Assembly: GCA_016748015.1 (NCBI GenBank)
Contig: JAAOMT010000009.1
Coordinates: forward strand, 204,459 to 268,458
Direction: 5' to 3'
Source: Geosiphon pyriformis uo1
Lineage: Eukaryota > Fungi > Glomeromycota
DNA length: 64,000 nucleotides
A program made the translations under genes and the position numbers. Of this stretch, positions 35,120-57,452 are shown one piece after another. Position 1 is the first letter of the stretch. Each line of letters starts with the position of its first letter. Below the pieces are notes generated by a model that saw only the letters and a program-made list of their open reading frames with translations, did not search any database and was not told where the DNA came from.

Positions 35120-36912
35120 ATGAAGAAGACTGCTAAGAATTCTGGTACTGGTAATGGTTTCAAGACAGTTTTGTCGAGAAAGAAGAGGAGGTGAGGTGTT
35201 TTGGAAGATGGTTCTGGTGGCGAAAGAGCGGTTTCTAAAGTCCAGGAGAGCCATTCATGGGGTTCAGAGATTGGGGACACTACTGAATTTGAGAGTATTG
35301 ATATGGAAAAGGAATGTCTGGTAGAGGAAACCAGCTTTGATTATGGTAAAGGTGGTGCTCTGACTGGTGGGGATCTTAATCAAACACCCACAGGCTTGAA
35401 AGTTAAAACCAAGAAGACATTGGGCAAGCCATTAAGAAAGATCAATTTCTCACAGAATAGTAATGGTGATAGTGTTCTCTCGAATGCTCCTCTTGAGCTC
35501 CTCCTTTCTTTGAAAAACTTGGTCAATGTCTCAGTCAGGAAGTCATTCGCGTTGGATATTAGCTTGAATAAGGTGGCTGACAAATCTTCTCAGGAAAAGT
35601 TTGTGGTGGTGAGAAAATTATTTTCTGGAATCAATAGCTTTGGGGGGTGTCTACCCTCTCAAAATTTTCAGAGATTATTAGAGCAACATTCACTTCCAAA
35701 TCGAGTTTAATGAAAGCTACTGATAAGGCTGCAAGTGTGAAGATCTTAGTAAACACCGATTTCAAAAAATCATCTGAGCAATCAGATTGGGCTGTGGTCA
35801 TAAAAGAAATTCCAATTGGAACATCGGCTAAGGCTGTGCGCACTGTGCTATCTGAGTTTGGAGTTATTAAGGTGATCAAGATGCAGTTAATTGGGCTGTG
35901 GCAGAAGACAGTGGTAGAATTCGAGCAACCGGATCAGACTGATTTGGTCGCAGCTAAGTGGTCTATCCTAATTGGGAAAGATGCTGTATGTGTGGCCAAG
36001 ACTGATTCAAACAAAAAGGCATGGAATGCAAGGGATTGACATAGGGCGCTGCTTTATACATTGCCAATGGGAACTAATGTTTATGATATCTGGGACTTTG
36101 TCAAATCTGTGGGTGAGAAAACTTGCATTATTGATCGTTATTCTGTTACATATGCTCGGGCCAGGTGTGCTGTTGTTTGCTTCAACTCTGCTGAGTCATT
36201 AGATGCTGCTGTGGGAACCACGCCAGTGCTTAGGAACACCAATCTCTGCTGGTCTCACCTCATTTCTACTAAATGCGCCAAGTGTGAGAAATTGGATCAC
36301 ATGTCATTGGGTTGTGCAGTTGGTAAGAAATTTTCTTCTGGTGGTTTGCTGCGTAGAGTTTTCTCGGATACAAATAAAAGCAGGCTGGCAACCATCTATG
36401 CCAAATACTTGGCTCCAGTTGCTCGTCCGGTCTCTTTTGGTGGTCTTTCTTGAGAAAAAGTTGCTTGTGGGTCTTCTTCACTCCCCCTCTCTAGTCAAAA
36501 TGTTTTGGTGGATAATGGCTCCTCTTTGGAGATGAAGCCGTCCCTACTGGTTACAATGGAAGTCAACAATAGGTTCGTCACTCTTGAGCGCAGTCTTGCC
36601 AGCCTCACGGAGCAAGTTGGTAAGCTGGCTAAGAGGTTGGATGCACTCAGGCCAATGGTTCCCCAGCCTAGCCCTAGATGTCAGCCATTGGTGACTCCTT
36701 CATCACAGGATCGAGAGGCGGATGTAGTGATGAGTGAAGACTCAGGTGTATCTACTAATGGTAGAACTGTCATGGAAGCAGTATTTTTCAATATGTCTTC
36801 AGTGTTTAAGCTGGAAGACAGCATGAAGTGTCTAATGGAAACAGTTCTGGACCTTTCAGCCAAAGTGGATAGTATTGGTGCGTGTTTGGTGTTTCTACCC
36901 CTTACTCAATGA
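35120..36912 (+). pseudogene. LINE ORF1 (RRM-like region, decayed CCHC knuckle, coiled coil)
   Basis: VVIKEIPIGTS..., CAKCEKLDHMSLGC, LERSLASLTEQVGKLAKRLDAL; broken by stops and a frameshift. Confidence 0.8.
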
Positions 36913-39900
36913 GCAGTTTGGTCTGGAAAGTTGCTATGTGTAATTTTAGGGGCATGAACAATCCCGCTAAACAGAAGGATATTATTAGATGGCATAAGGA
37001 AATGAACAATTTGGTCTCTATCATTACTGAAACAAAATTAAGAAGTAAGGTTCATCCGTGGATTGCAGATAAGTTTGATGGTTTTTGAGTGTTCACTTCT
37101 GGTTTGGACTCTGGTCACTTAGGTGCAGGTGTTGCTGTTGTCATGGATGTTTCTTTGGCTCGTCATGTATACAAGGTTTCTAAGGTGCCTGGTCAGCTCC
37201 TGTTCATTAAATTACTTTTCAAGGGTAAACTTTCTGTGTTAATTCTGGGGCTTTATGCTGGTGCCTTTTTGGTGGTTCAGTTCTCTCAGGCCGGTAAAAT
37301 CAACTCTCTTATTGCGAAGGCTGTTAATGAATCTTCTTTTACTGTTCTTGGTGGTGATTTCAATAAAGATGGTTCTCGTAAGTGTGCAAGTTTTAGGAAA
37401 TGCCTTGATTTGGGTCTGGTAAATTCTTTGGTCGGAAGCCCAGCTGTAAAAATATCCACTTGGGCGAACTCTAGGGGTGTTAGAAAAACAATTGACTATG
37501 TTTTGGTTTCTTCGAATTTGGTTAATGTGATAGTACACCATGGTGTTTCAGATGTTGGTGCATATTTTGAAATGGATCATCAAGCTGTTTTTGTGTCTTT
37601 GGGCTTGGGTGGTTTGCTGGATGTGCAGTTGAACTCTCTTCACAAACAGGCGAATAGAGATTGTTGGAAGTTTGATTTTAAGGGTGCTGATGATGTGAAA
37701 TAGAACAAGTTCAAGGGTGCTATAGCAGCTAATACTGCCATGTTCTCTGATGATTTTATTGCCTCTCAGTGATTCTCAGATTTGGATGTGATATGAGATG
37801 TTGTTCGCAAGATAATGGTTTTTTCAGCTAATAAGGTGTTCAAAAAGAAATGATTTAAGGACTATGATGGTGTCTTCACTAAAGAATCATTCAAATTTCA
37901 TAAGTTAGAACTTTTGATATTGAAGCTAGTTAAAGCTTCTTGGTTGATTTGTCATGATGAATTTATTTTACTGTTAGATGTCTGGGGTTCTCTTGATGAT
38001 AATAAAGCCTTTGTGGTCAGATCTCTCTTTCTCTCCAGCTCTTCTCTTGATACTGTTCGGTCAGCTCTTTCCAAGGTCAGAAAAACTTATCACTCACTCA
38101 AAATGGTGAAGTCAAAGCACATAGAAGAATCTCAAATCAAGTTAGTAATCAATAAGAGAATGGAAAGTTTCAAGCTGAACAAGAGTCACACTATTCGGAG
38201 TGTCTTGGAGTGCCCTTTCATAAGGTTGTTTTGGACCACTTAGTTGTGGATAATGAGTTGATTTTGGAACCTGGTCCTGTGAGACTAAGCATAGATGAAA
38301 TCATGGAAGAGTGGACTAAAAAGCGTAGGGTGGTTCCCGATATCTCTGATGTGTGGCACCATCAGTATCGGCCATTGGATTACATTTTTGATGAGGCTTT
38401 TTCTGGTATAATACAGCCAATTGAGTTTTTGGAATTGTATGGCATGGTTTCTGATCTGCCTATTGGCAAGGCTGCTGGTCTTTTAGGTATTTCAAATGAG
38501 CTGTGGATGCATAGTGATAGGTCTGTTTTGGATATGCTCTTGGTGCTTCTGAATTCTTGTCTGTCTTGTGAGTCTGTGCCTGGTCCTTGGAGAGAAGCTT
38601 GGGTTTCGATAATCCCTAAGCCATACAAATGGGAAGATATCCTCACAAATACCCAACCTATAATCTTGATCAAGATGGCTCACAAGATCCTCTCTAAGAT
38701 TCTCTCTGACAGAATATCGCTGGCGTACAGTGCTCATGACATTCTTCATAAGGACAATTTTTCAGTTCTGAAGGGTACAACTACCCAAACTCCTATTTTT
38801 GCTATTGGTTCAGTTGTTAAAGATGCTTTGGAGAAAAATCGGGAGCTCTGGCTGGTGTTGCAGGACATGCGAAAGACATACGACTCTGTTGGATGGGAGC
38901 ATCTTGAGAAGTGTTTGGTCAGGATCAAAATGTGTGGCAAGTTTATTTGTTTTTTTGGTAGTATTCATAAAAATCGTATCAATTGGGTTATGACAGATTT
39001 TGGTTTAACTGATGGTTACAGTATACATGATGGGTTGAACCAAGGAGAAGTTTTTTCTCCTCTTCTTTGGCGCATATTTTATGATCCTCTTTTGTGTGAA
39101 GTCAAGTGTCAGGAGAGTGTGTGTGGGTATAGACTCAATTCTCATTTTGTCTTTAAGAGTGGTCATGCTGAATCTCAGGCTGGGTTTTCTACTTTTTTTG
39201 CTGCTGGGGCCTTTGTTGATAACACAATTTGGGTTGGCAGCAGTTAGGCTGCTACTCAACATATTCTCAATGTTGCTAGTGAATTTTTTCGAATTAATAA
39301 CATTTCAATCAATAATAACAAGACTGTGGCCATTCTTATTAATAGCAGGATCAGCAATCCATCTCTTTTTATCAGTGGTTTACCCATTTCTATAGCCAAA
39401 AAAGGTGAATCTTATCGGTATCTTGGTATCTTTCTCTTGACCAATGGTCTTTCTAAGCCTAGTTTGGCTAAGGCGCATTCAAACATTTGTTTTTTTAGTA
39501 ATTTGGTTCTGAAGAAAGCAGTTTCAGATAAGCAGTTCTTGTACTTGGTGTTAGCAGTTCTCTATCTTATAGTTAACTATAGGATGCAGTTCAGCTTTGT
39601 TTCTGTTAGTGTGTATGACAAGTGGGATGTTCTGATTTGCAAGAGTTTGAAACTTAAATCTGGTCTTCCTCTTGATTTTCCTAGTGACACAATTCACCAT
39701 TCTTCTTTTTATGGGTTGAAGTCCTTTTTACAATGTCAGTCTGAAAGCAAGATTGCTGCACTTATTAGTTTTGTGAACTTCTGCAGGGTTCTGGGTCAAT
39801 TGTTTGGTCACAGGTCTCACGACTTGCAAGTTCTGTGTTGGCACTCCATTCATCTATTGAGTTCACTGGCTCATATTCGTGTTAGTGTTTCCAATAATTT

Positions 39901-41587
39901 CTTGTCAAGTATCGTGCGCATTCTTCTTGGATGCAGATTGTCTTTAGGTAGTTCTTTGGCCAGCTTTTTTTGGTTTTGTGATGGAGTACCTATATCAGCT
40001 GTCCTGAACGAATTCTTGTTTTTTAAGTACTTGTCCTCTCTCCGGTGTTATGGTATTGCCTTTGTGGATCAGCTTCGGGATCATCATGAGGATATTTTTG
40101 ATTAGTACACCTTTAAGTGGTGGAAAAAACTGGATCCTCGTGGCCCAGTTCCTGAATGGTTTGGGCGCTCTGTTGCATTTCTCAGTAGTGCACCTCCCTC
40201 TCCTTTGGTTTTGAGTGGTGTTGGCCCTGTGAACATTCATGATTCTGATGATTTTGTGTCTGTATGTGATCGTCTTTCTTGGGTTGGCACTGATAGTTTG
40301 TCTGTATATATGGATGGGTCAGTAAAAAATTTGGGCTCGACTGGTTGTAGGGCCGGGGCTGCTGCCTTTTTTGAGGACATTAACTTGGGTTTAAGTGTCT
40401 GTATTCGGGGTTTGATGTCATCTACTTTGGCAGAGTTGCAGGCTGTAGTGTTGGCTCTGGAATGCATACCTGTGGATTGTTCTGTTCACCTGTTTTCAGA
40501 TAGCCAGACAGCCTTGGATGCTTGCAAGTTGGAGGTTAACTTGGTGTATCTTAACTTTCACAATCGGTGTTGGGTTGAGTGCTGGCATATTAAGAATATT
40601 ATACATAGAAAAAATTTGAGGGTCAGCTGGCACAAGGTTAAGAGCCACTTTGGTGTGTTGGGAAATGATTGCGCCAATAGCATTACTGATGTTGCAGCTC
40701 TCTCTGATTGGTTTCTCCCTCCTCGTGTTGCTGAACAGTTTTTGTTGGCAGATGGTGGTATTGTTTTTGGTAATTCTAGACACTTTGTTCGAGATGTTTT
40801 TTATGCTGTCTGTCAGGTGCACTGAGAGGTCGGTTCTGGTTCTGGGTTTCTAGCTGGTGTTTTGCGCTCAAATATCAATTGGCCTACCTCTTCCAGAGTT
40901 TGGCACTCTGATTTGCATATGACAACTGGTTTCACCAGCAAGCACACTGCTGATATTCGTACTTACCTTATGAAGGCTTTGCACCGTCAGCTTCCTGTGG
41001 CTGTTCGAAAGCACATTTATGATAAATGTTACTCTAGTGTTTTGTGTCTGTATTATAGTGAGGTGGAGGTATCTGATCATGTGTTTTCTTGTGTAATTGA
41101 TGATACGGCTCATTGTCAGGTTTTGGAATCCTGTATGTCTTCTTAGAAGGTGCTTTCTGGTCTCTTTCTCCCTGCTTCAGGCGTTTTACAGCTGCTGTCA
41201 ACTTGTGCTTCGGATTTCTTAGTATTTTCGACTCTTTGCAAGGGTTTTGTTTTCAAAGGATGGCTTCAGGAGGCTGTTTCTATCTTCCATGTTCCCAAAG
41301 TTGCTGGCATTAAAATTGCTGATTTTGTACACTCTATTTGTGCTGCTTTCAGGAATGACATTTGGTTGGTTCGTGCTAAGTATCGTGCATACATGGAAAA
41401 AAATGGCCTGATCTCAGTGAATGGCTCAGTTTCTGTCTCAGTTTCTGGTTTGGCTTCAAGATTCTCAAATGGTATGGTTAAGCTGCTTGGTGTTGCTGAA
41501 GCTTTTGGTGTCTGTTTTGGCTTTCACAAATCTTGCTTTTTTTTTTCAGGTATTGGTGACCTGGTTTCAGTTAATATAATTGTGTAG
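36909..41587 (+). pseudogene. LINE ORF2 (APE-RT-RNase H-zinc finger)
   Basis: CNFRGMN, ITETK, GGDFN, IDYVLVS, MDH (APE); QDMRKTYDSV, GLNQGEVFSP, AFVDNT (RT, DD>DN); YMDGS, AELQA, FSDSQ, KVKSH..GND (RNase H); CLYY..DHVFSC. Confidence 0.92.
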
Positions 41588-41729
41588 TGTTGTTCTGACT
41601 GGCTCAAGTGGCTGGTCACGTGTAGAAAGTGCATGATTCATGCCTAGTTTAGATCATTTCTTTGATGTATATTTCTAGGTAGTGTTTGGACCTTGTTCAT
41701 TAAATGGAAAAAAAAAAAAACTTAATAAT

Positions 41730-46563: not shown

Positions 46564-47407
46564 ATGTCAAATTCACTCCATACAAATGGCCCCGTTTCCA
46601 CAAGTACTTCGCCGTCTATAGTTGAAGAAAGGGTGGTATTAAACGTGGGTGGTGTAAAGGTATTTTAAAAAGTTTATGAGAAAGGAGCTTTGCGATCTTT
46701 CTATTGAAATTTATTATCATAAAATATTACATATAAAATTTCAAACATAGTATGAAACTTATCGCGCGACCTTGACTGCCTACCCTCACACTCGTCTTGG
46801 AAGATTATTCAAGAATAAGAAAAAGACACCATCTAATCGTGATGAACATTTTTTTGATCGAAATGGTCATGCCTTTCACTATATTCTCGAATATTATCGT
46901 ACAGGACGTATTACATTTCCACGTGATGATGTTAACTCTGGTGGTAGAGGGGTTGCCTTAGATCGAGAAATTTTCAATGAGCTCGAATATTTTGAAATTT
47001 TGCCCGCTAACATTCCTCACCAGAACAAAGCATTGGCGATACGAATCGATCAACTGGTCAACTTCCTTAGACAAACTTATTTTGAAGCAGTTTCGAGGAT
47101 GCAATTGGAAACAGATATTCGATTTCATGTCGATGGCACTTACTTTGCACCAATAGATGTGAATTTTTGTATTGGGGCTTCTGGCTATGTCATCTTGGAG
47201 AGATTTGGAAAAGATATCGAGTCACATTTGAAGTCTACGATTCCGTTGTTGAAAGCAAACTTTACACACTATCCAAAGGGTAACACTTATCCTGAAAATA
47301 GGATAGTTTCAATGCCACATTATCAAATTCAATTCTTTGTCGAGACTGATAATTATGATTTTGATGCCGTCCGCAAAATCTCCTCTTTAAAATCAAGAGA
47401 TCCTTGA
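46564..47407 (+). CDS. BTB/POZ (KCTD/T1-type) domain protein, ~250 aa; exons 46564..46659 and 46751..47407
   Basis: A 91-nt GT..AG phase-0 intron joins ERVVLNVGGVK to YETYRATLTAYPHTRLG; FFDRNGHAFHYILEYYRTG and ELEYFEI are T1-BTB motifs. Confidence 0.9.
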
Positions 47408-48293: not shown

Positions 48294-49910
48294 TCATTCT
48301 AATCCCACTTCAATTCCTACACAATAATGCTTGGGAGTTTCGGTGATATTGAAATAATTGATTTTTCTCCTTTGCTTTCTGGCAAAGTTTTGGACTAAAG
48401 TTTGGTGAATATCATTGCGACCATCACAAGCCCATGAGAGATAAGAAATAGAACTTGGAGCATTATCAAGAAATCCGCGCAGGTATTTTGCCAATAAGAT
48501 CCATCGATCCGCATTTAAAACCTTAAAACCAAATGGAAGGCATGTTGCTATTTGTGGAAAGTATTTATATAATTTAAATAACCGAGAATCATCAAGTAAT
48601 GGTCTTGGGATAGTCAGCGATTTCAACCGGGAAGTTTTTACCAAGCTTAAAAGGTCCTGAATTTGTTGGTCGGTACATATAAATGTCCCAAAATTTACAA
48701 GATTCGGACAATGAGATGCGATTGTTTTGAGAATAGTCGGGCAATATCTCAAATCTATGAAAAGGTTGAGGTCGGTCAAAATTACATTTGTATTTATCAG
48801 AATTGCTTCCAATTCCAAGGATGCTGCGTTTCGTGGATCATAATTCCAATTTTTTTCAATCCCATTAAATTCCAGATAGCGAAGGTTGGGATATTGTGCA
48901 ATAGCCAATGATTTCAAGCTAACTGAGGTTACTGAGAAATTTGAAAAACTCAATCTTTCCAAATTCTGACATTTTCCCAAACTTTTTAAATCGAAATTAT
49001 CTGGCACCATTCCTCCAAAAATTTCTATTTTTCGCAAAGAGCTTTTTATTTTACCAAGGCTTAGCACCTCCAGTTCGCGTGATAAATCGATTTGATCACC
49101 AACTGTAAGCTCCAAATTTTTTAAATTTCCTTGAACTTTTATCAAACGAGAAAAATCAAACTTTTTCTGATTCGAAAGACCGAACGCCACGATTAAATCC
49201 TCAAGACAATGGCATGAATCTGCTACAGCTTTAAAGAATTCGGCATCATTAAATTGATCATTGCAAGTCAATTTTCTTAGAGAGGAAAGCCAAATTTTCA
49301 TTGATGGGAAAGAGGCAATAGCAGATATGTATTTTTTTGCGCAGATTTCAAACCAGATTGATTTGTTCTTTAATGAAGAGGGTAAATCTGTGTTTAAATA
49401 TTCGAGCGTTCGATGTTCGAGGTCAATTTTGCTAAGGTTGATTAGAACTTTGCAGATCTCGTTTGTAATTTGAAAGCAGCGTTCCTCATGAGTATCCCCC
49501 GTATCGATTTCTGTACCATCGATATCGAACTCACATTGACCACGATAGAAAATATTATTCAATGATGACCATTTTAATACCAATCTGTACAAATTATAGT
49601 AATTCAATTCACGAAGAAATGCTGGATATTCAAAGGCAGGCTTTGGTTGTGATGGTATGTTGCCAAGCTTGAGTTTTAATTTATAATCTTCAATATTTAT
49701 AAAAGTTAGATAAACTGGGATTATCTTGAAGAGCTTTGATTCTGCGATCATGTCGCAATTAAAAGGTTTCCTCCAAAGCGTTGGCATGCCACTTTTGCAC
49801 CATTGTCTATTTACTAAAATTGCTGAATGTAAAGTTCGATAATCATCCGGGTTGATTGCCAAGAAAATTCTTACAAGGCATTCCATTGGTAAAAAGCTGG
49901 ATGTCTCCAT
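48294..49910 (-). CDS. F-box domain / RNI-like leucine-rich repeat protein, 538 aa
   Basis: N-terminal LPMECLVRIF...LHSAILVNRQWC..G.P.LWRKPF and PAFEYPAFLRELN; LRR-like units (LRKLTC, LEDLIV, LKNLEL, CQNLERLSF, CPNLVNF); intact single ORF. Confidence 0.88.
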   Translation of the reverse strand: METSSFLPMECLVRIFLAINPDDYRTLHSAILVNRQWCKSGMPTLWRKPFNCDMIAESKLFKIIPVYLTFINIEDYKLKLKLGNIPSQPKPAFEYPAFLRELNYYNLYRLVLKWSSLNNIFYRGQCEFDIDGTEIDTGDTHEERCFQITNEICKVLINLSKIDLEHRTLEYLNTDLPSSLKNKSIWFEICAKKYISAIASFPSMKIWLSSLRKLTCNDQFNDAEFFKAVADSCHCLEDLIVAFGLSNQKKFDFSRLIKVQGNLKNLELTVGDQIDLSRELEVLSLGKIKSSLRKIEIFGGMVPDNFDLKSLGKCQNLERLSFSNFSVTSVSLKSLAIAQYPNLRYLEFNGIEKNWNYDPRNAASLELEAILINTNVILTDLNLFIDLRYCPTILKTIASHCPNLVNFGTFICTDQQIQDLLSLVKTSRLKSLTIPRPLLDDSRLFKLYKYFPQIATCLPFGFKVLNADRWILLAKYLRGFLDNAPSSISYLSWACDGRNDIHQTLVQNFARKQRRKINYFNITETPKHYCVGIEVGLE

Positions 49911-50200: not shown

Positions 50201-50970
50201 ACCAGTCAGACTCTGCAGATCCGAGAAATTCATACCGGAGGCGATATGCGCCATTTTCTTTAAACCACTAAAGCTCTATAATATAGCCAAATTAAAAAAA
50301 TAAAACCAGTTAATAATTGTAAAAATATGTGATTTTTTAAATAAATTATATATATATATTAAAATTGCTACAATATGTAAAGATTTTTATAATTTTATAA
50401 TTTATTAAGATATCTATTTGTTCATCTTGAGATTTTTATTAAAATCTAAATAAACTTGAAATTTGTATGTTATTAATCTAATTAAATAACAAACTTTAAT
50501 GGCAGAAACAAATTACAAAGTCAAAAAACTATTTACAGCAAATAAAACAATTTCGTTTATCATTTTTTAGGCAATTGAAAATTTAAACAAAAACTGATGT
50601 AAAAGTAATGATACATAAATTTGCCCAATTCGCTTTATTTGAAAAGCAGAAGTGTATTTTAGATAATATTTTATAAACTAATTTTATTTATCATGATATT
50701 ATAAAATAAAGTATTATACACCAAGAAAATTTTTCCTCTTAAAGCTATTCTTCCAACACAATCAAGACACTTATAAAAATATTTAACCAGTGCGTAAACT
50801 ACTTAAATTTTGTATATAAAAGGATGTGATCGACTCATTAAGTAGATAATCAGGAATATTAATTACATGTAAATTCGGGTTTATTTTTTGAATATCCAAT
50901 CTTCGCACCCAAAAAAATTCAAATTGAAAAGTTACCTTGAACTAAAATTTAAAGAACTCACCGCTCTTTT

Positions 50971-51140
50971 TTCAATGGTAATACGGAGCATGGCAGTTAA
51001 AATTGAATTGACCAACGAAATGCGTGATGGGGCAATTATAATGACAACGGCAACCGAAATTTGAAACGTAAAGGTGCAGACAATGGCAGAAACCACAATT
51101 TTGGCAGTTTCCAATGATGATAACCATGGTAATCATAATC
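50971..51140 (+). pseudogene. Second decayed Asn/Gly-repeat paralog fragment
   Basis: Translation FNGNTEHGS*...WGNYNDNGNRNLKRKGADNGRNHNFGSF/NDDNHGNHN, including a KR site; TATATAAA upstream at ~50813. Confidence 0.45.
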
Positions 51141-51549
51141 CTTTGATTGAGCACGTGGCCCAAAGGCATAATCACAAAGAATCAAATAACACAGAAAGTA
51201 ACTTTTGAAACTAACAACTGTTTATCCTGTATCAAAAAAGTGAAGAGCTAAAAAATAATTTATTGCAAATCAAACTGTCGACTTTATTTTGTATTGTTAA
51301 TGAAAGCAGAAATCCACTTGTAAATAATTAAGCCGCTATGGCTAAACTTACCAATAAGACATGTTAAATGCATGTTTAACATTTTGGAAACAGAAACGTG
51401 TAGATAGGTATTTTTCATGTAGAAATTATTTATTTATATTCTTTACAAGCTAGACATTTATTTCAAAGATTTAGATTTTTACAAGTATATGTGGAATTCT
51501 TGAATCTATGTATTTTTTAGGTTGCACTTCACAAATTTTATTTGAGTAT

Positions 51550-53061
51550 CTAGTAGTTGAAATTACCGTTGTGGTAGCCGTTGTCATTTCCCCAGTTGTA
51601 ATTTCCATTAGAAAGACCATTATAACTTCCATAGTTGTTGTTTCCGTTTGCTACTCCATTGCCACTTCCCCAGTTGGAATTTCCATTGAATTGGCCATTG
51701 CCATTTCCCCAGTTGCCATTACCATTGCCGACACCATTATAAACAGCTTGACGTTTGTAGTTGTTATTACCGTTGTAGTAGCCGTTGCCATTTCCCCAGT
51801 TGTAATTTCCATTAGAAACACCATTATAACTTCCATAGTTGCCATTTCCATTAGAAACACCATTATAACTACCCCAGTTGGAATTTCCATTGAATTGGCC
51901 ATTGCCATTTCCCCAGTTGCCATTACCATTGCCTACACCGTTACCAATAGCTTGACGTTTGTAGTTGTTATTACCGTTCCAGTAGCCGTTGCCATTTCCC
52001 CAGTTGTAATTTCCATTAGAAAGACCATTCAAACTTCCATAGTTGTTGTTTCCATTAGAATCACCATTAGAACTTCCCCAGTTGACATTTCCATTGAATT
52101 GGCCATTGCCATTTCCCCAGTTGCCATTACCATTGCCGACACCATTATAATAAGCTTGACGTTTGTAGTTGTTATTACCGTTCCAGTAGCCGTTGCCATT
52201 TCCCCAGTTGTAATTTCCATTAGAAAGACCATTCAAACTTCCATAGTTGTTGTTTCCATTAGAATCACCATTAGAACTTCCCCAGTTGACATTTCCATTG
52301 AATTGGCCATTGCCATTTCCCCAGTTGCCATTACCATTGCCGACACCATTATAATAAGCTTGACGTTTGTAGTTGTTATTACCGTTCCAGTAGCCGTTGC
52401 CATTTCCCCAGTTGTAATTTCCATTAGAAAGACCATTCAAACTTCCATAGTTGTTGTTTCCATTAGAATCACCATTAGAACTTCCCCAGTTGACATTTCC
52501 ATTGAATTGGCCATTGCCATTTCCCCAGTTGCCATTACCATTGCCGACACCATTATAATAAGCTTGACGTTTGTAGTTGTTATTACCGTTCCAGTAGCCG
52601 TTGCCATTTCCCCAGTTGTAATTTCCATTAGAAAGACCATTCAAACTTCCATAGTTGTTGTTTCCATTAGAATTACCATTGCCACTTCCCCAGTTGACAT
52701 TTCCATTGAATTGGCCATTGCCATCTCCCCAGTTGCCATTACCATTGCCGACACCATTATAAACAGCTTGACGTTTGTAGTTGTTATTACCGTTCCAGTA
52801 GCCGTTGCCATTTCCCCAGTTGTAATTTCCATTAGAAAGACCATTCAAACTTCCATAGTTGTTGTTTCCATTAGAATCACCATTAGAACTTCCCCAGTTG
52901 ACATTTCCATTGAATTGGCCATTGCCATTTCCCCAGTTGCCATTACCATTGCCGACACCATTATAATAAGCTTGACGTTTCTCCGAGGGAGCGGCGGAAG
53001 TAGCAAGAGAGAGAAGGGCAACACATGCCATCACAGATAGGGAAACCGATTTAATTGCCAT
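51550..53061 (-). CDS. Secreted Kex2-processed repeat protein (KEP-type precursor): signal peptide plus seven 66-aa Asn/Gly/aromatic-rich peptides separated by KR
   Basis: Intact 503-aa ORF: MAIKSVSLSVMACVALLSLATSA/APSEKR, then 7 x 68-aa (204-bp) units starting Q-A, each preceded by KR (29 + 7x68 - 2 = 503). Confidence 0.9.
   Translation of the reverse strand: MAIKSVSLSVMACVALLSLATSAAPSEKRQAYYNGVGNGNGNWGNGNGQFNGNVNWGSSNGDSNGNNNYGSLNGLSNGNYNWGNGNGYWNGNNNYKRQAVYNGVGNGNGNWGDGNGQFNGNVNWGSGNGNSNGNNNYGSLNGLSNGNYNWGNGNGYWNGNNNYKRQAYYNGVGNGNGNWGNGNGQFNGNVNWGSSNGDSNGNNNYGSLNGLSNGNYNWGNGNGYWNGNNNYKRQAYYNGVGNGNGNWGNGNGQFNGNVNWGSSNGDSNGNNNYGSLNGLSNGNYNWGNGNGYWNGNNNYKRQAYYNGVGNGNGNWGNGNGQFNGNVNWGSSNGDSNGNNNYGSLNGLSNGNYNWGNGNGYWNGNNNYKRQAIGNGVGNGNGNWGNGNGQFNGNSNWGSYNGVSNGNGNYGSYNGVSNGNYNWGNGNGYYNGNNNYKRQAVYNGVGNGNGNWGNGNGQFNGNSNWGSGNGVANGNNNYGSYNGLSNGNYNWGNDNGYHNGNFNY
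51553..52974 (-). repeat. Seven-copy 204-bp coding tandem repeat with a 39-bp (13-codon) sub-period
   Basis: Units 1, 3, 4 and 5 are identical in protein sequence; internal NGxxNGNxN[W/Y]Gxx motif. Confidence 0.95.
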
Positions 53062-53210
53062 TTTATTAAGTATCAGAAGAATGTTAAGGTTTAATTCGTT
53101 AGAGGAATATAGAAACAGAGGAGAGATTACAACCTAATTATTGGACAGATATGTAATTTTATCGAGAAGAACAATTCGATGAAGAAAGATAAAGGTTGAT
53201 TGATAGGGTC

Positions 53211-53218
53211 TTTATATA
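53211..53218 (-). promoter_or_regulatory. Putative TATA box of the repeat-peptide gene
   Basis: TATATAAA on the minus strand ~150 bp upstream of the ATG, followed by a pyrimidine-rich leader. Confidence 0.45.
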
Positions 53219-56682: not shown

Positions 56683-57452
56683 ATGTCGAACAAACCAGTT
56701 GTGATGTTCCAAAAACCCAAAAATGTGAAGCACACTCTACCTGTTGTCGATCATATAAAATTCTCACCTGTACCTAAAGTTTCTGGTCTGGGTTTCCGGA
56801 CCAGCGATAACACCAATGTCACGGTCACAAAGTCACCGTTGTTGTGTGAATCGTGATTCAATGATTGGAAATTTCGTAGTGGATACGTTTAATTTGCATC
56901 CTAGGATGGTACCTTAGGTCCGGGATCTAGCTGACATGTAGGATAGATATGCAGTTGTAAGGGCTGCCGTTCTTTATGCGCCTGCCATCAACAAGTAATG
57001 ATAGCGTTTTCGTATGTTTTGACTACGAGGATCATGGAGGTCTTCCAACAGATATCATCGAAGCTCAGTCTATGAATCGTTTTATGTTGTGCCCGATTTG
57101 GTCTCACTCTCAGTGGTGCTCAGTACCTTCTGGACTGTTCAAAGGGAAAGTGTAAACGCAACAGTAATGTCGACTTCAATCTGTTCGTAGACGAGCAATG
57201 TATTGACCTCAGGCTGATCAAAGATATCATTCCAAACACCACTTTTACGGGAAAGACATCATTAAAGTTATCATTTACCCGTCACTGCAACATTAGAACT
57301 TTGTAATTTACCGATACCCACGACCCTCCAGGAGAGTAACTCACGAAGCGAAATCAACCAAATCGAAAAGAGTTGATCTTGATGAGTTTAGTCAATATAA
57401 AGATAAAGTTGACGATTTAATACGTCGTATGGGTGAAGTCAGTGATCAGTGA
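56683..57452 (+). pseudogene. Endogenous viral element: degraded jelly-roll capsid protein (S-domain, sobemo/tombus/barna-like)
   Basis: Manual translation across frameshifts: MSNKPVVMFQKPKNVK...FRTSDNTNVTVTKSPLLCE / FVVDTFNLHPRMVP*VRDLADM*DRYAVVRAAVLYAPAI / TSNDSVFVCFDYEDHGGLPTDIIEAQSMNRFMLCPIWSHSQ / SNVDFNLFV / VTATLELCNLPIPTTLQ. Motif order matches the S-domain as recalled. GC/CpG-rich island within AT-rich DNA. Confidence 0.65.

What the first reader, a model, noticed from the sequence alone, without database searches (positions are those of the whole stretch)
51550..53061. Secreted precursor of seven 66-aa Asn/Gly peptides with a strict 13-residue repeat: candidate functional amyloid or beta-solenoid surface protein
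Seen: signal peptide, short propeptide and seven KR-delimited units. Each mature peptide starts with Gln, has no Cys and almost no charge, and is 24/66 Asn, 18/66 Gly and 11/66 aromatic (unit 1). It is built of five sub-repeats: NGVGNGNGNWGNG / NGQFNGNVNWGSS / NGDSNGNNNYGSL / NGLSNGNYNWGNG / NGYWNGNNNY, consensus NGxxNGNxN[W/Y]Gxx. Known: Kex2 cleaves after KR and Kex1 trims it; N-terminal Gln tends to cyclise to pyroglutamate; Ustilago Rep1 is a Kex2-processed repeat precursor whose peptides form amyloid-like hyphal coats; curli subunits are five-repeat N/Q/G-rich beta-solenoids. Inference: each peptide may be a five-rung solenoid with Asn and aromatic ladders that polymerises outside the cell (wall coat, adhesin, symbiotic interface, or ice/mineral templating), in a lineage where hydrophobins are not well established. 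No DUF3328/UstYa gene is visible in the window, which argues against a dikaritin RiPP.
Basis: partly seen in the sequence, partly recalled or inferred. Interest (0 to 1): 0.85.

Follow-up and report, generated by a model that had tools for sequence, protein, structure and literature searches.

The report
Geosiphon RIC-family Asn/Gly peptide precursor
This is a real, very highly expressed gene of the cyanobacterium-hosting fungus Geosiphon pyriformis for a secreted precursor probably cut into seven asparagine/glycine repeat peptides; it belongs to the already named RIC family (it may be RIC1 itself), and its strict 13-residue repeat points to a folded, stackable coil rather than the disordered protein the literature assumes, but nothing about its function has been tested.

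Summary
In detail: a 503-aa intronless ORF (51550-53061, minus strand) with a hydrophobic leader and seven KR-delimited 66-aa units of five 13-residue repeats. The genome is Geosiphon pyriformis. The gene is transcribed and polyadenylated, and it carries 15% of all contigs of one run. It is one of at least 35 secreted paralogues sharing the 13-mer. The family is published as GpRIC1-3 / 'GN-rich IDPs', with Kex2 cleavage and amyloid character already suggested (PMC8786786). One paralogue matches RIC2's 456 aa; this gene is probably RIC1 (~65%, not provable here). Added here: the seven framework Asn/Gly positions show 77 synonymous and 0 replacement differences; an MSA-based AlphaFold model is a 13-residue-per-coil beta-solenoid (low confidence, pLDDT 49); and the same repeat occurs in secreted bacterial and ascomycete proteins and resembles the Pentapeptide_2 repeat. 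Best reading: cut peptides fold into short uncapped coils that stack into fibres in the wall or extracellular matrix (0.5). Ice nucleation, curli membership and a RiPP role are unsupported. The scan found this family before on several other pieces of this genome.

The parts
51550..53061 (-). Intronless ORF, 503 aa, Asn/Gly-rich Kex2-type repeat precursor (RIC family; probably GpRIC1)
52993..53061 (-). Predicted signal peptide, residues 1-23 (cleavage after Ala23 inferred from the -1/-3 rule)
   Evidence: hydropathy; SignalP not run
52975..52992 (-). Four-residue propeptide plus first Lys-Arg site (residues 24-29)
52777..52974 (-). Unit 1, 66 aa: 4-residue cap, four 13-mers and one 10-residue partial repeat; followed by KR
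52573..52770 (-). Unit 2 (4 aa different from unit 1)
52369..52566 (-). Unit 3 (identical to unit 1 in DNA)
52165..52362 (-). Unit 4 (identical to unit 1 in DNA)
51961..52158 (-). Unit 5 (identical to unit 1 in DNA)
51757..51954 (-). Unit 6 (9 aa different from unit 1)
51553..51750 (-). Unit 7, C-terminal, ends at the stop with no GPI tail (9 aa different from unit 1)
53211..53218 (-). TATA-box-like octamer, about 55-80 nt upstream of the furthest 5' RNA contig ends (53131-53155)
   Evidence: function inferred
51513..51549 (-). Short 3' UTR; non-genomic poly(A) joins at 51536 and 51513
   Evidence: poly-T loose ends in run X1; flanking genomic bases are not T-runs

Best explanation
A massively expressed structural-peptide precursor. 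SHOWN: intact ORF, transcription with poly(A), hydrophobic leader, KR between units, a kexin gene in the genome, and a 13-residue framework under purifying selection. INFERRED: the leader sends the chain into the ER. Kex2 cuts after each KR and Kex1 removes the basic pair, releasing six or seven ~7 kDa peptides whose Gln-Ala start is either cyclised or trimmed. Each 13-mer (4+4+5 residues: NGxx, NGNx, N[W/Y]Gxx) makes one turn of a very narrow three-sided parallel beta-solenoid held by Asn ladders with Gly corners, and the variable positions and the W/Y ladder face outward. A five-coil peptide has almost no cap, so peptides stack end to end into amyloid-like filaments and bundle, or grip wall polysaccharide, through the aromatic ladder. 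The product would be a bulk protein material in the wall or extracellular matrix, plausibly of the Nostoc-containing bladder. It would work like Ustilago Rep1 (Kex2 polyprotein giving a fibrillar coat) but with a hydrophilic, unrelated repeat.
For: Among sub-repeats within a unit, framework codon pairs show 77 synonymous and 0 replacement differences (n=198), while variable positions show 6 and 126 (n=156); all unit-to-unit substitutions avoid the framework and position 10. The same framework holds in 282 distinct repeats from paralogues and 113 repeats from 24 other proteins. Paralogues carry the repeat as unbroken runs of up to 50 copies or as KR-cut pieces of 2-11 copies, as expected for a rod that can be made whole or in stackable pieces. 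The AF2 model with a 38-row MSA has bridges at repeat positions 1, 7, 10 and 13 in most coils, continuing across the KR junction. Its top 50 structural neighbours are essentially all beta-helices or solenoids (best Z 9.8, rmsd 3.7; Atlas TM up to 0.80). In bacterial P0020 and P0057 the 13-mer block sits among RTX-like repeats. There is no Pro in the mature part. Abundance: 24,063 of 157,637 contigs of run X1 lie on this gene, and unique-end depth is about 23-25,000 in X3; RIC1-3 were 22.3, 5.0 and 3.0% of cDNA reads (PMC8786786 Table S9).
Against: The model is low-confidence (pLDDT 48.8, pTM 0.38; single-sequence model 41.8 and unstructured), and Foldseek gave nothing significant. Z 8-10 is common for repeats. 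No experiment shows cleavage, folding, polymerisation or localisation. The family occurs in root-symbiotic Ambispora and Paraglomus and in bacteria, so it is not specific to the cyanobacterial symbiosis. Framework positions were defined partly from the same data. Contig depth is a poor measure of expression, and the life stage of the runs is unknown.
Confidence: 0.5

Rival explanations
1. Folded solenoid peptides that do not polymerise but act as soluble or wall-bound adhesins or polysaccharide binders (chitin/glucan, or Nostoc exopolysaccharide) through the outward W/Y ladder.
For: The nearest folds include adhesin beta-helices (TibA, Ag43, YadA-like heads). Aromatic ladders bind sugars (established knowledge). 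The repeat is used as a module in surface-sorted bacterial proteins with VPLPA/PEP-CTERM-like tails and in Thr-rich or GPI-tailed paralogues.
Against: Five coils without caps are unlikely to be stable alone (inference). Extreme abundance and polyprotein amplification fit a bulk material better. A shared fold shows no function.
Confidence: 0.2
2. Intrinsically disordered Gly/Asn-rich peptides forming a hydrated gel or a non-specific cross-beta aggregate, as the literature classes them (PMC8786786).
For: Low complexity, GRAVY -1.46; single-sequence AF2 gives no fold; no Pfam or PDB sequence match.
Against: A strict 13-residue register with 0 replacements against 77 silent changes at framework sites, conserved across fungi and bacteria, is not what a composition-only function predicts.
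Confidence: 0.12
3. Nitrogen store or sink: a condensed Asn/Gly polymer that banks nitrogen fixed by Nostoc.
For: Huge expression in a fungus housing an N2-fixer. Unit 1 is about 19% nitrogen by mass (96 N atoms in 6957 Da; hand count) against about 16% for average protein.
Against: The nitrogen gain is modest; Trp and Tyr are costly and conserved; the family exists in fungi and bacteria without N-fixing partners.
Confidence: 0.07
4. Signalling peptides or RiPP precursor (pheromone-like KEP, dikaritin).
For: KEP architecture; possible Ste13-type X-Ala dipeptide after each KR; Tyr-rich.
Against: The units are 66 aa, far above the 9-24 aa pheromone class (PMC6339444). No UstYa hit in the genome (control blank). 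Neighbours are an F-box/LRR gene, a BTB gene and transposons. Signal peptides do not need this abundance.
Confidence: 0.05
5. Ice-binding/nucleating or mineral-templating solenoid.
For: The model resembles LpIBP (Z 8.0, rmsd 8.1) and Tenebrio AFP (Z 5.9, rmsd 2.7 over 82 residues) in overall fold.
Against: No Thr at all, hence no TxT/SLT ice-binding motif; fungal INpros are 16-residue InaZ orthologues (PMC12978214); almost no acidic residues for mineral binding.
Confidence: 0.06

Closest known systems
GpRIC1-3 of Geosiphon pyriformis (MH580277-9; Hoffrichter 2018 thesis as cited in PMC8786786) and the GN-rich 'IDPs' Pabra_AGL2 and Amlep_AGL4/5
   Same: Same species; GN-rich, ER signal, KR sites, extreme transcript abundance. 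Pabra_AGL2 and Amlep_AGL4/5 show the same 13-mer, and Pabra_AGL2 the same signal-KR-unit-KR layout. Paralogue L032 gives 23 + 3x143 + 2x2 = 456 aa, the length of RIC2 (the middle of that locus is a gap).
   Different: 503 aa matches neither RIC2 (456) nor RIC3 (470). RIC1's sequence and length were not available, so identity with RIC1 is inferred from abundance only. The paper treats the family as disordered and does not report the 13-residue period in the parts read.
KEX2-processed repeat proteins (KEPs; PMC6339444), especially Ustilago maydis Rep1 repellents (PMC3133707)
   Same: Signal peptide plus repeats separated by KR; Rep1 peptides form amyloid fibrils in the wall, the functional analogy favoured here.
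   Different: Rep1 peptides are 34-53 aa and amphipathic; these are 66 aa, strongly hydrophilic, with an internal 13-mer. No homology seen.
Pentapeptide_2 (PF01469, XNXGX) repeats of mycobacterial PPE-MPTR proteins
   Same: Asn-x-Gly side. Bacterial relatives carry XNXGX runs directly adjoining 13-mers. The Atlas model of the bacterial 13-mer region has PF01469/PPE clusters as four of its five listed neighbours (TM 0.43-0.48). Proposed to be beta-helical (PMC4858275).
   Different: Period 13 (5+4+4), not 5; no PF01469 hit for any family member tested; TM below 0.5.
Curli CsgA/CsgB
   Same: Secreted, N/G-rich, five coils per subunit, probable end-to-end stacking.
   Different: Curli repeats are about 22 residues and two-sided with Gln/Asn ladders (own knowledge); no Pfam hit; weak structural match (Z 5.8, rmsd 7.9).

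Membership tests
GN-rich RIC family (Glomeromycotina) | Secreted, Gly+Asn-rich, Pro-poor, from G. pyriformis, with KR sites | tested here: met
   against the description in PMC8786786
GN-rich RIC family (Glomeromycotina) | Shares its repeat with published members (Pabra_AGL2, Amlep_AGL4/5, RIC2-length locus) | tested here: met
   A. leptoticha CAG8643519 has six in-register repeats
GpRIC1 (gene identity) | Sequence identity with MH580277.1 | not testable with these tools
   Record not retrievable. Abundance fits (15% of contigs in run X1 against 22.3% of reads); length excludes RIC2 and RIC3.
KEP (Kex2-processed repeat protein) | N-terminal signal peptide | tested here: met
   hydropathy only; same leader type in paralogues
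KEP (Kex2-processed repeat protein) | Near-identical motifs separated by [KR]R, with kexin in the genome | tested here: met
KEP (Kex2-processed repeat protein) | Cleavage occurs in vivo | not testable with these tools
   needs proteomics
Intrinsically disordered protein (literature label) | Composition, not position, is conserved; no fixed fold | tested here: not met
   position-specific purifying selection; periodic though low-confidence model
Ustilago Rep1 repellents | Amphipathic 34-53-aa peptides | tested here: not met
   66 aa, GRAVY -1.46; definition from PMC3133707
Functional amyloid | Forms cross-beta or stacked-solenoid fibrils | not testable with these tools
   only Pro-free composition and the solenoid model
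Curli (CsgA/B) | Curlin repeat of about 22 residues, Pfam match | tested here: not met
   period 13, no Pfam hit; Z 5.8, rmsd 7.9
Pentapeptide_2 (PF01469) | Tandem XNXGX with period 5, Pfam match | tested here: not met
   lag-5 identity 0.21 against 0.57 at lag 13; no hit; structural likeness only borderline
Ice-nucleating / ice-binding solenoids | TxT/SLT motifs, 16-residue InaZ coil | tested here: not met
   0 Thr; PMC12978214
Dikaritin RiPP precursor | UstYa/DUF3328 gene in the cluster | tested here: inconclusive
   no PF11807 hit in the whole genome, but the control set was blank too; nearest neighbours are F-box/LRR and BTB genes

The most novel reading that the evidence does not exclude
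The 13-mer NGxxNGNxNxGxx is an uncatalogued, very narrow three-sided Asn-ladder beta-solenoid, a compact cousin of the Pentapeptide_2 repeat, shared by early-diverging Glomeromycotina, an ascomycete, Alphaproteobacteria and Streptomyces. The Kex2-released peptides of this gene self-assemble into a new class of functional filament that is the major protein of the Geosiphon bladder wall or symbiotic interface.
Probability: 0.3. Interest if true: 0.75.

Novelty: already known. Interest (0 to 1): 0.42.

Why it matters
RIC transcripts make up about 30% of cDNA reads in the only known fungus-cyanobacterium endosymbiosis, yet no function is shown in the literature I could read. If the peptides are stackable solenoids, this gives a concrete, cheap test (one 66-mer) for what the dominant secreted product of Geosiphon does. 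It would also overturn the 'disordered' label for GN-rich proteins of early-diverging mycorrhizal fungi and define a repeat fold with no Pfam model that also occurs in bacteria. The gene family, the Kex2 idea and the amyloid idea are not new.

Tried and rejected
Pfam, PDB sequence search and Atlas feature search: no hits. The search for homologous proteins, whole protein and residues 1-100: nothing scored. This probably reflects low-complexity scoring or absence from the index, not novelty; exact look-ups were also blank, so RIC1 could not be compared directly. Single-sequence AF2: uninformative. Foldseek PDB: nothing under E 2. The search for related loci with alignment A1 failed for lack of a conserved stretch; it was repeated by reference with a bacterial member. 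An N/G-looking decayed stretch at about 50,970-51,140 (+) gave no blastn hit to the paralogues, so it is not counted as a family remnant. The antisense 510-aa ORF was rejected as a shadow. Paper searches found no functional study of RIC proteins; the Hoffrichter thesis is not in the library.

Full report
OBSERVATION. The ORF at 51550-53061 (minus) is intact, 503 aa. It consists of a 27-residue leader with a hydrophobic core, then KR and seven 66-residue units separated by KR. Each unit is a 4-residue cap, four 13-mers and a 10-residue partial repeat. The 13-periodicity is far beyond chance (30/53 identities at lag 13; 0 of 100,000 shuffles). Units 1, 3, 4 and 5 are identical in DNA. DNA-run depth over the repeat is 3.1-3.6x the flanks where the assembly predicts 4.6-4.8x, so six units is as likely as seven.

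EXPRESSION. Two runs (X1, X3), though labelled uncertain or DNA, cover essentially only about 51,500-53,155, that is the ORF plus short UTRs. X1 has non-genomic poly-T ends at 51513 and 51536, 14-37 nt past the stop. I read them as RNA or cDNA runs showing an unspliced, polyadenylated minus-strand transcript. A TATA-like octamer lies at 53211-53218. 24,063 of the 157,637 contigs of X1 (15%) lie on this gene, and X3's unique end contigs have depth of about 23-25,000. Contig depth cannot rank genes precisely, but this is an extremely abundant transcript.

ORGANISM AND FAMILY. The assembly has 128.3 Mb in 792 contigs. Protein KAG9291474.1 of Geosiphon pyriformis has the length, N-terminus and KR count of a 178-aa paralogue (L032, minus strand) and lies on a contig of identical length, so the genome is G. 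pyriformis. A profile of the repeat gives 104 matches in the genome. Reading them out gave at least 35 other loci, nearly all with a signal peptide. Some are unbroken runs of up to 50 repeats, some are KR-cut polyproteins of 2-11 repeats per unit, and some are fused to Thr-rich, acidic or GPI-like tails. Four paralogues lie within about 130 kb on the same contig. Across 282 distinct repeats, N1, G2, N5, G6, N7, N9 and G11 are 93-100% conserved (the scan pattern itself required most of these), while positions 4, 8, 10, 12 and 13 accept charged residues.

WHAT IS PUBLISHED. Schultz et al. 2022 (PMC8786786) describe GN-rich secreted 'IDPs' in Ambispora, Paraglomus and Geosiphon. They name GpRIC1-3 (MH580277-9, from Hoffrichter's 2018 thesis), note that all three carry KR as possible Kex2 sites, and link GN-richness to amyloid. 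RIC1-3 were 22.3, 5.0 and 3.0% of cDNA library reads; RIC2 is 456 aa and RIC3 470 aa. Their Paraglomus and Ambispora sequences show the same 13-mer, and Pabra_AGL2 has the same signal-KR-unit-KR layout. Paralogue L032 (23-aa leader, 143-aa units) gives 456 aa with three units, which fits RIC2 (inference across an assembly gap). The present gene is neither 456 nor 470 aa at any whole unit count, and it dominates a 2019 run, so it is probably RIC1 (about 65%). I could not fetch MH580277 to test this. The scan's earlier agents reached the same family on other pieces of this genome; I had found the paper before that look-up.

IS IT FOLDED? Among sub-repeats within a unit, the seven framework positions differ silently in 77 of 198 codon pairs and never by replacement, whereas the other positions differ by replacement in 126 of 156. 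That is positional purifying selection and argues against the disordered label. A single-sequence AlphaFold2 run was uninformative (pLDDT 42). With a 38-row in-register alignment, two units gave pLDDT 48.8 and pTM 0.38, with beta-bridges at repeat positions 1, 7, 10 and 13 in most coils, running through the KR junction. Foldseek found nothing significant. VIA-align ranked almost only beta-helices (TibA Z 9.8, Ag43 8.9, LpIBP 8.0, Tenebrio AFP 5.9, CsgA 5.8), with lower rmsd to right-handed ones, and the Atlas gave TM up to 0.80 to bacterial models. This supports 'narrow solenoid' in general and no particular relative; the model is weak. The Asn spacing of 4+4+5 suggests three sides with inward Asn ladders (inference). 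Position 10 tolerates Lys in paralogues, so the W/Y ladder of this gene likely lies on the surface.

BEYOND GLOMEROMYCOTINA. The profile search of 1.84 billion representatives gave 155 hits. Twenty-four proteins not named as Geosiphon have 4-7 strictly in-register 13-mers, none reproduced in 2,000 shuffles each, with the same positional profile; they were found with the profile, so the match is partly by selection. Named sources are Ambispora leptoticha, Microdochium bolleyi (labelled hydrophobin by UniRef), Mesorhizobium sp. B1-1-8 (5.7-Mb record), Rhodopila, Streptomyces and a Flavobacteriales MAG, plus Paracoccaceae and Alphaproteobacteria MAGs. Contig contexts are bacterial. Several have signal peptides and VPLPA/PEP-CTERM-like tails and carry XNXGX pentapeptides next to the 13-mers. 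The Atlas model of one such region is nearest to Pentapeptide_2/PPE clusters (TM 0.43-0.48), a repeat proposed to be beta-helical (PMC4858275). This goes against the paper's view that such proteins are confined to Glomeromycotina. Homology versus convergence is untested.

PROCESSING. A kexin gene (P-domain, Ser/Thr stretch, membrane tail) is present, as is a DPP-IV/Ste13-type gene. Every unit starts Gln-Ala, so pyroglutamate formation and dipeptide trimming are both possible; N-terminal Gln is rare among paralogous units. No UstYa or class I hydrophobin was found, but the controls were blank. The neighbours are an F-box/LRR gene, a BTB gene and decayed retroelements, with no biosynthetic cluster.

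MECHANISM AND VERDICT. Most likely (0.5), Kex2 releases short, uncapped solenoid peptides that stack into amyloid-like filaments forming wall or matrix material. This works like Rep1 (PMC3133707) but is not a member of that family. The rivals are non-polymerising adhesin or polysaccharide binder (0.2), disordered gel (0.12), nitrogen store (0.07), ice or mineral templating (0.06; no Thr) and signal or RiPP (0.05). The family and the core idea are already published, and the gene is probably already named, so I class it as already known. What remains of value is a sharp structural hypothesis for what is probably the most abundant transcript of this symbiosis, and the wider spread of an unmodelled repeat. 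Interest 0.42.

LEFT OUT. The putative viral capsid fossil noted elsewhere in the window was not examined.

Noticed in passing
G000:C773:379,070-380,470 (L032:772-2171 +): Paralogue with a 23-aa leader and 143-aa (11 x 13) units, across an assembly gap; three units give 456 aa, the published length of GpRIC2.
   Followed up: partly
L060 (JACJZT010000028.1, 'Flavobacteriales' MAG, 8 kb contig): Neighbouring ORFs with 15 and 52 in-register 13-mers; the contig could be a eukaryotic contaminant of the bin.
   Followed up: no
L057, L059, L061 (bacterial contigs): Small clusters of secreted bacterial proteins with XNXGX pentapeptides plus 13-mers, some with VPLPA/PEP-CTERM-like C-terminal tails; L057 has three such genes around a two-component system.
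   Followed up: partly
P0012 (KXJ90418.1, Microdochium bolleyi): Seven 13-mers fused to a Cys-rich C-terminal part that UniRef labels hydrophobin (no Pfam hit).
   Followed up: partly
L034, L038, L041, L051 (G000 C580, C773): Family polyproteins that interleave 13-mer units with very short KR-delimited peptides (3-5 aa, acidic or aromatic).
   Followed up: no
window 50,970-51,140 (+): Stop-ridden Asn/Gly-like stretch just downstream of the gene; no blastn match to the paralogues, so probably not a family remnant.
   Followed up: yes
window ~1-25,000 and 35,200-41,600 (+): Decayed Ty3/Gypsy-like retroelement pieces (dUTPase-like, RT) and a decayed non-LTR-like RT/RNase H element, flanked by very AT-rich (8-11% GC) tracts.
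   Followed up: no
window 46,772-47,407 (+) and 48,294-49,910 (-): BTB/POZ-domain gene and F-box/LRR gene, both typical expanded Glomeromycotina families.
   Followed up: partly
window 56,683-57,452: An earlier scan note reports a fossil viral capsid gene here; not examined.
   Followed up: no
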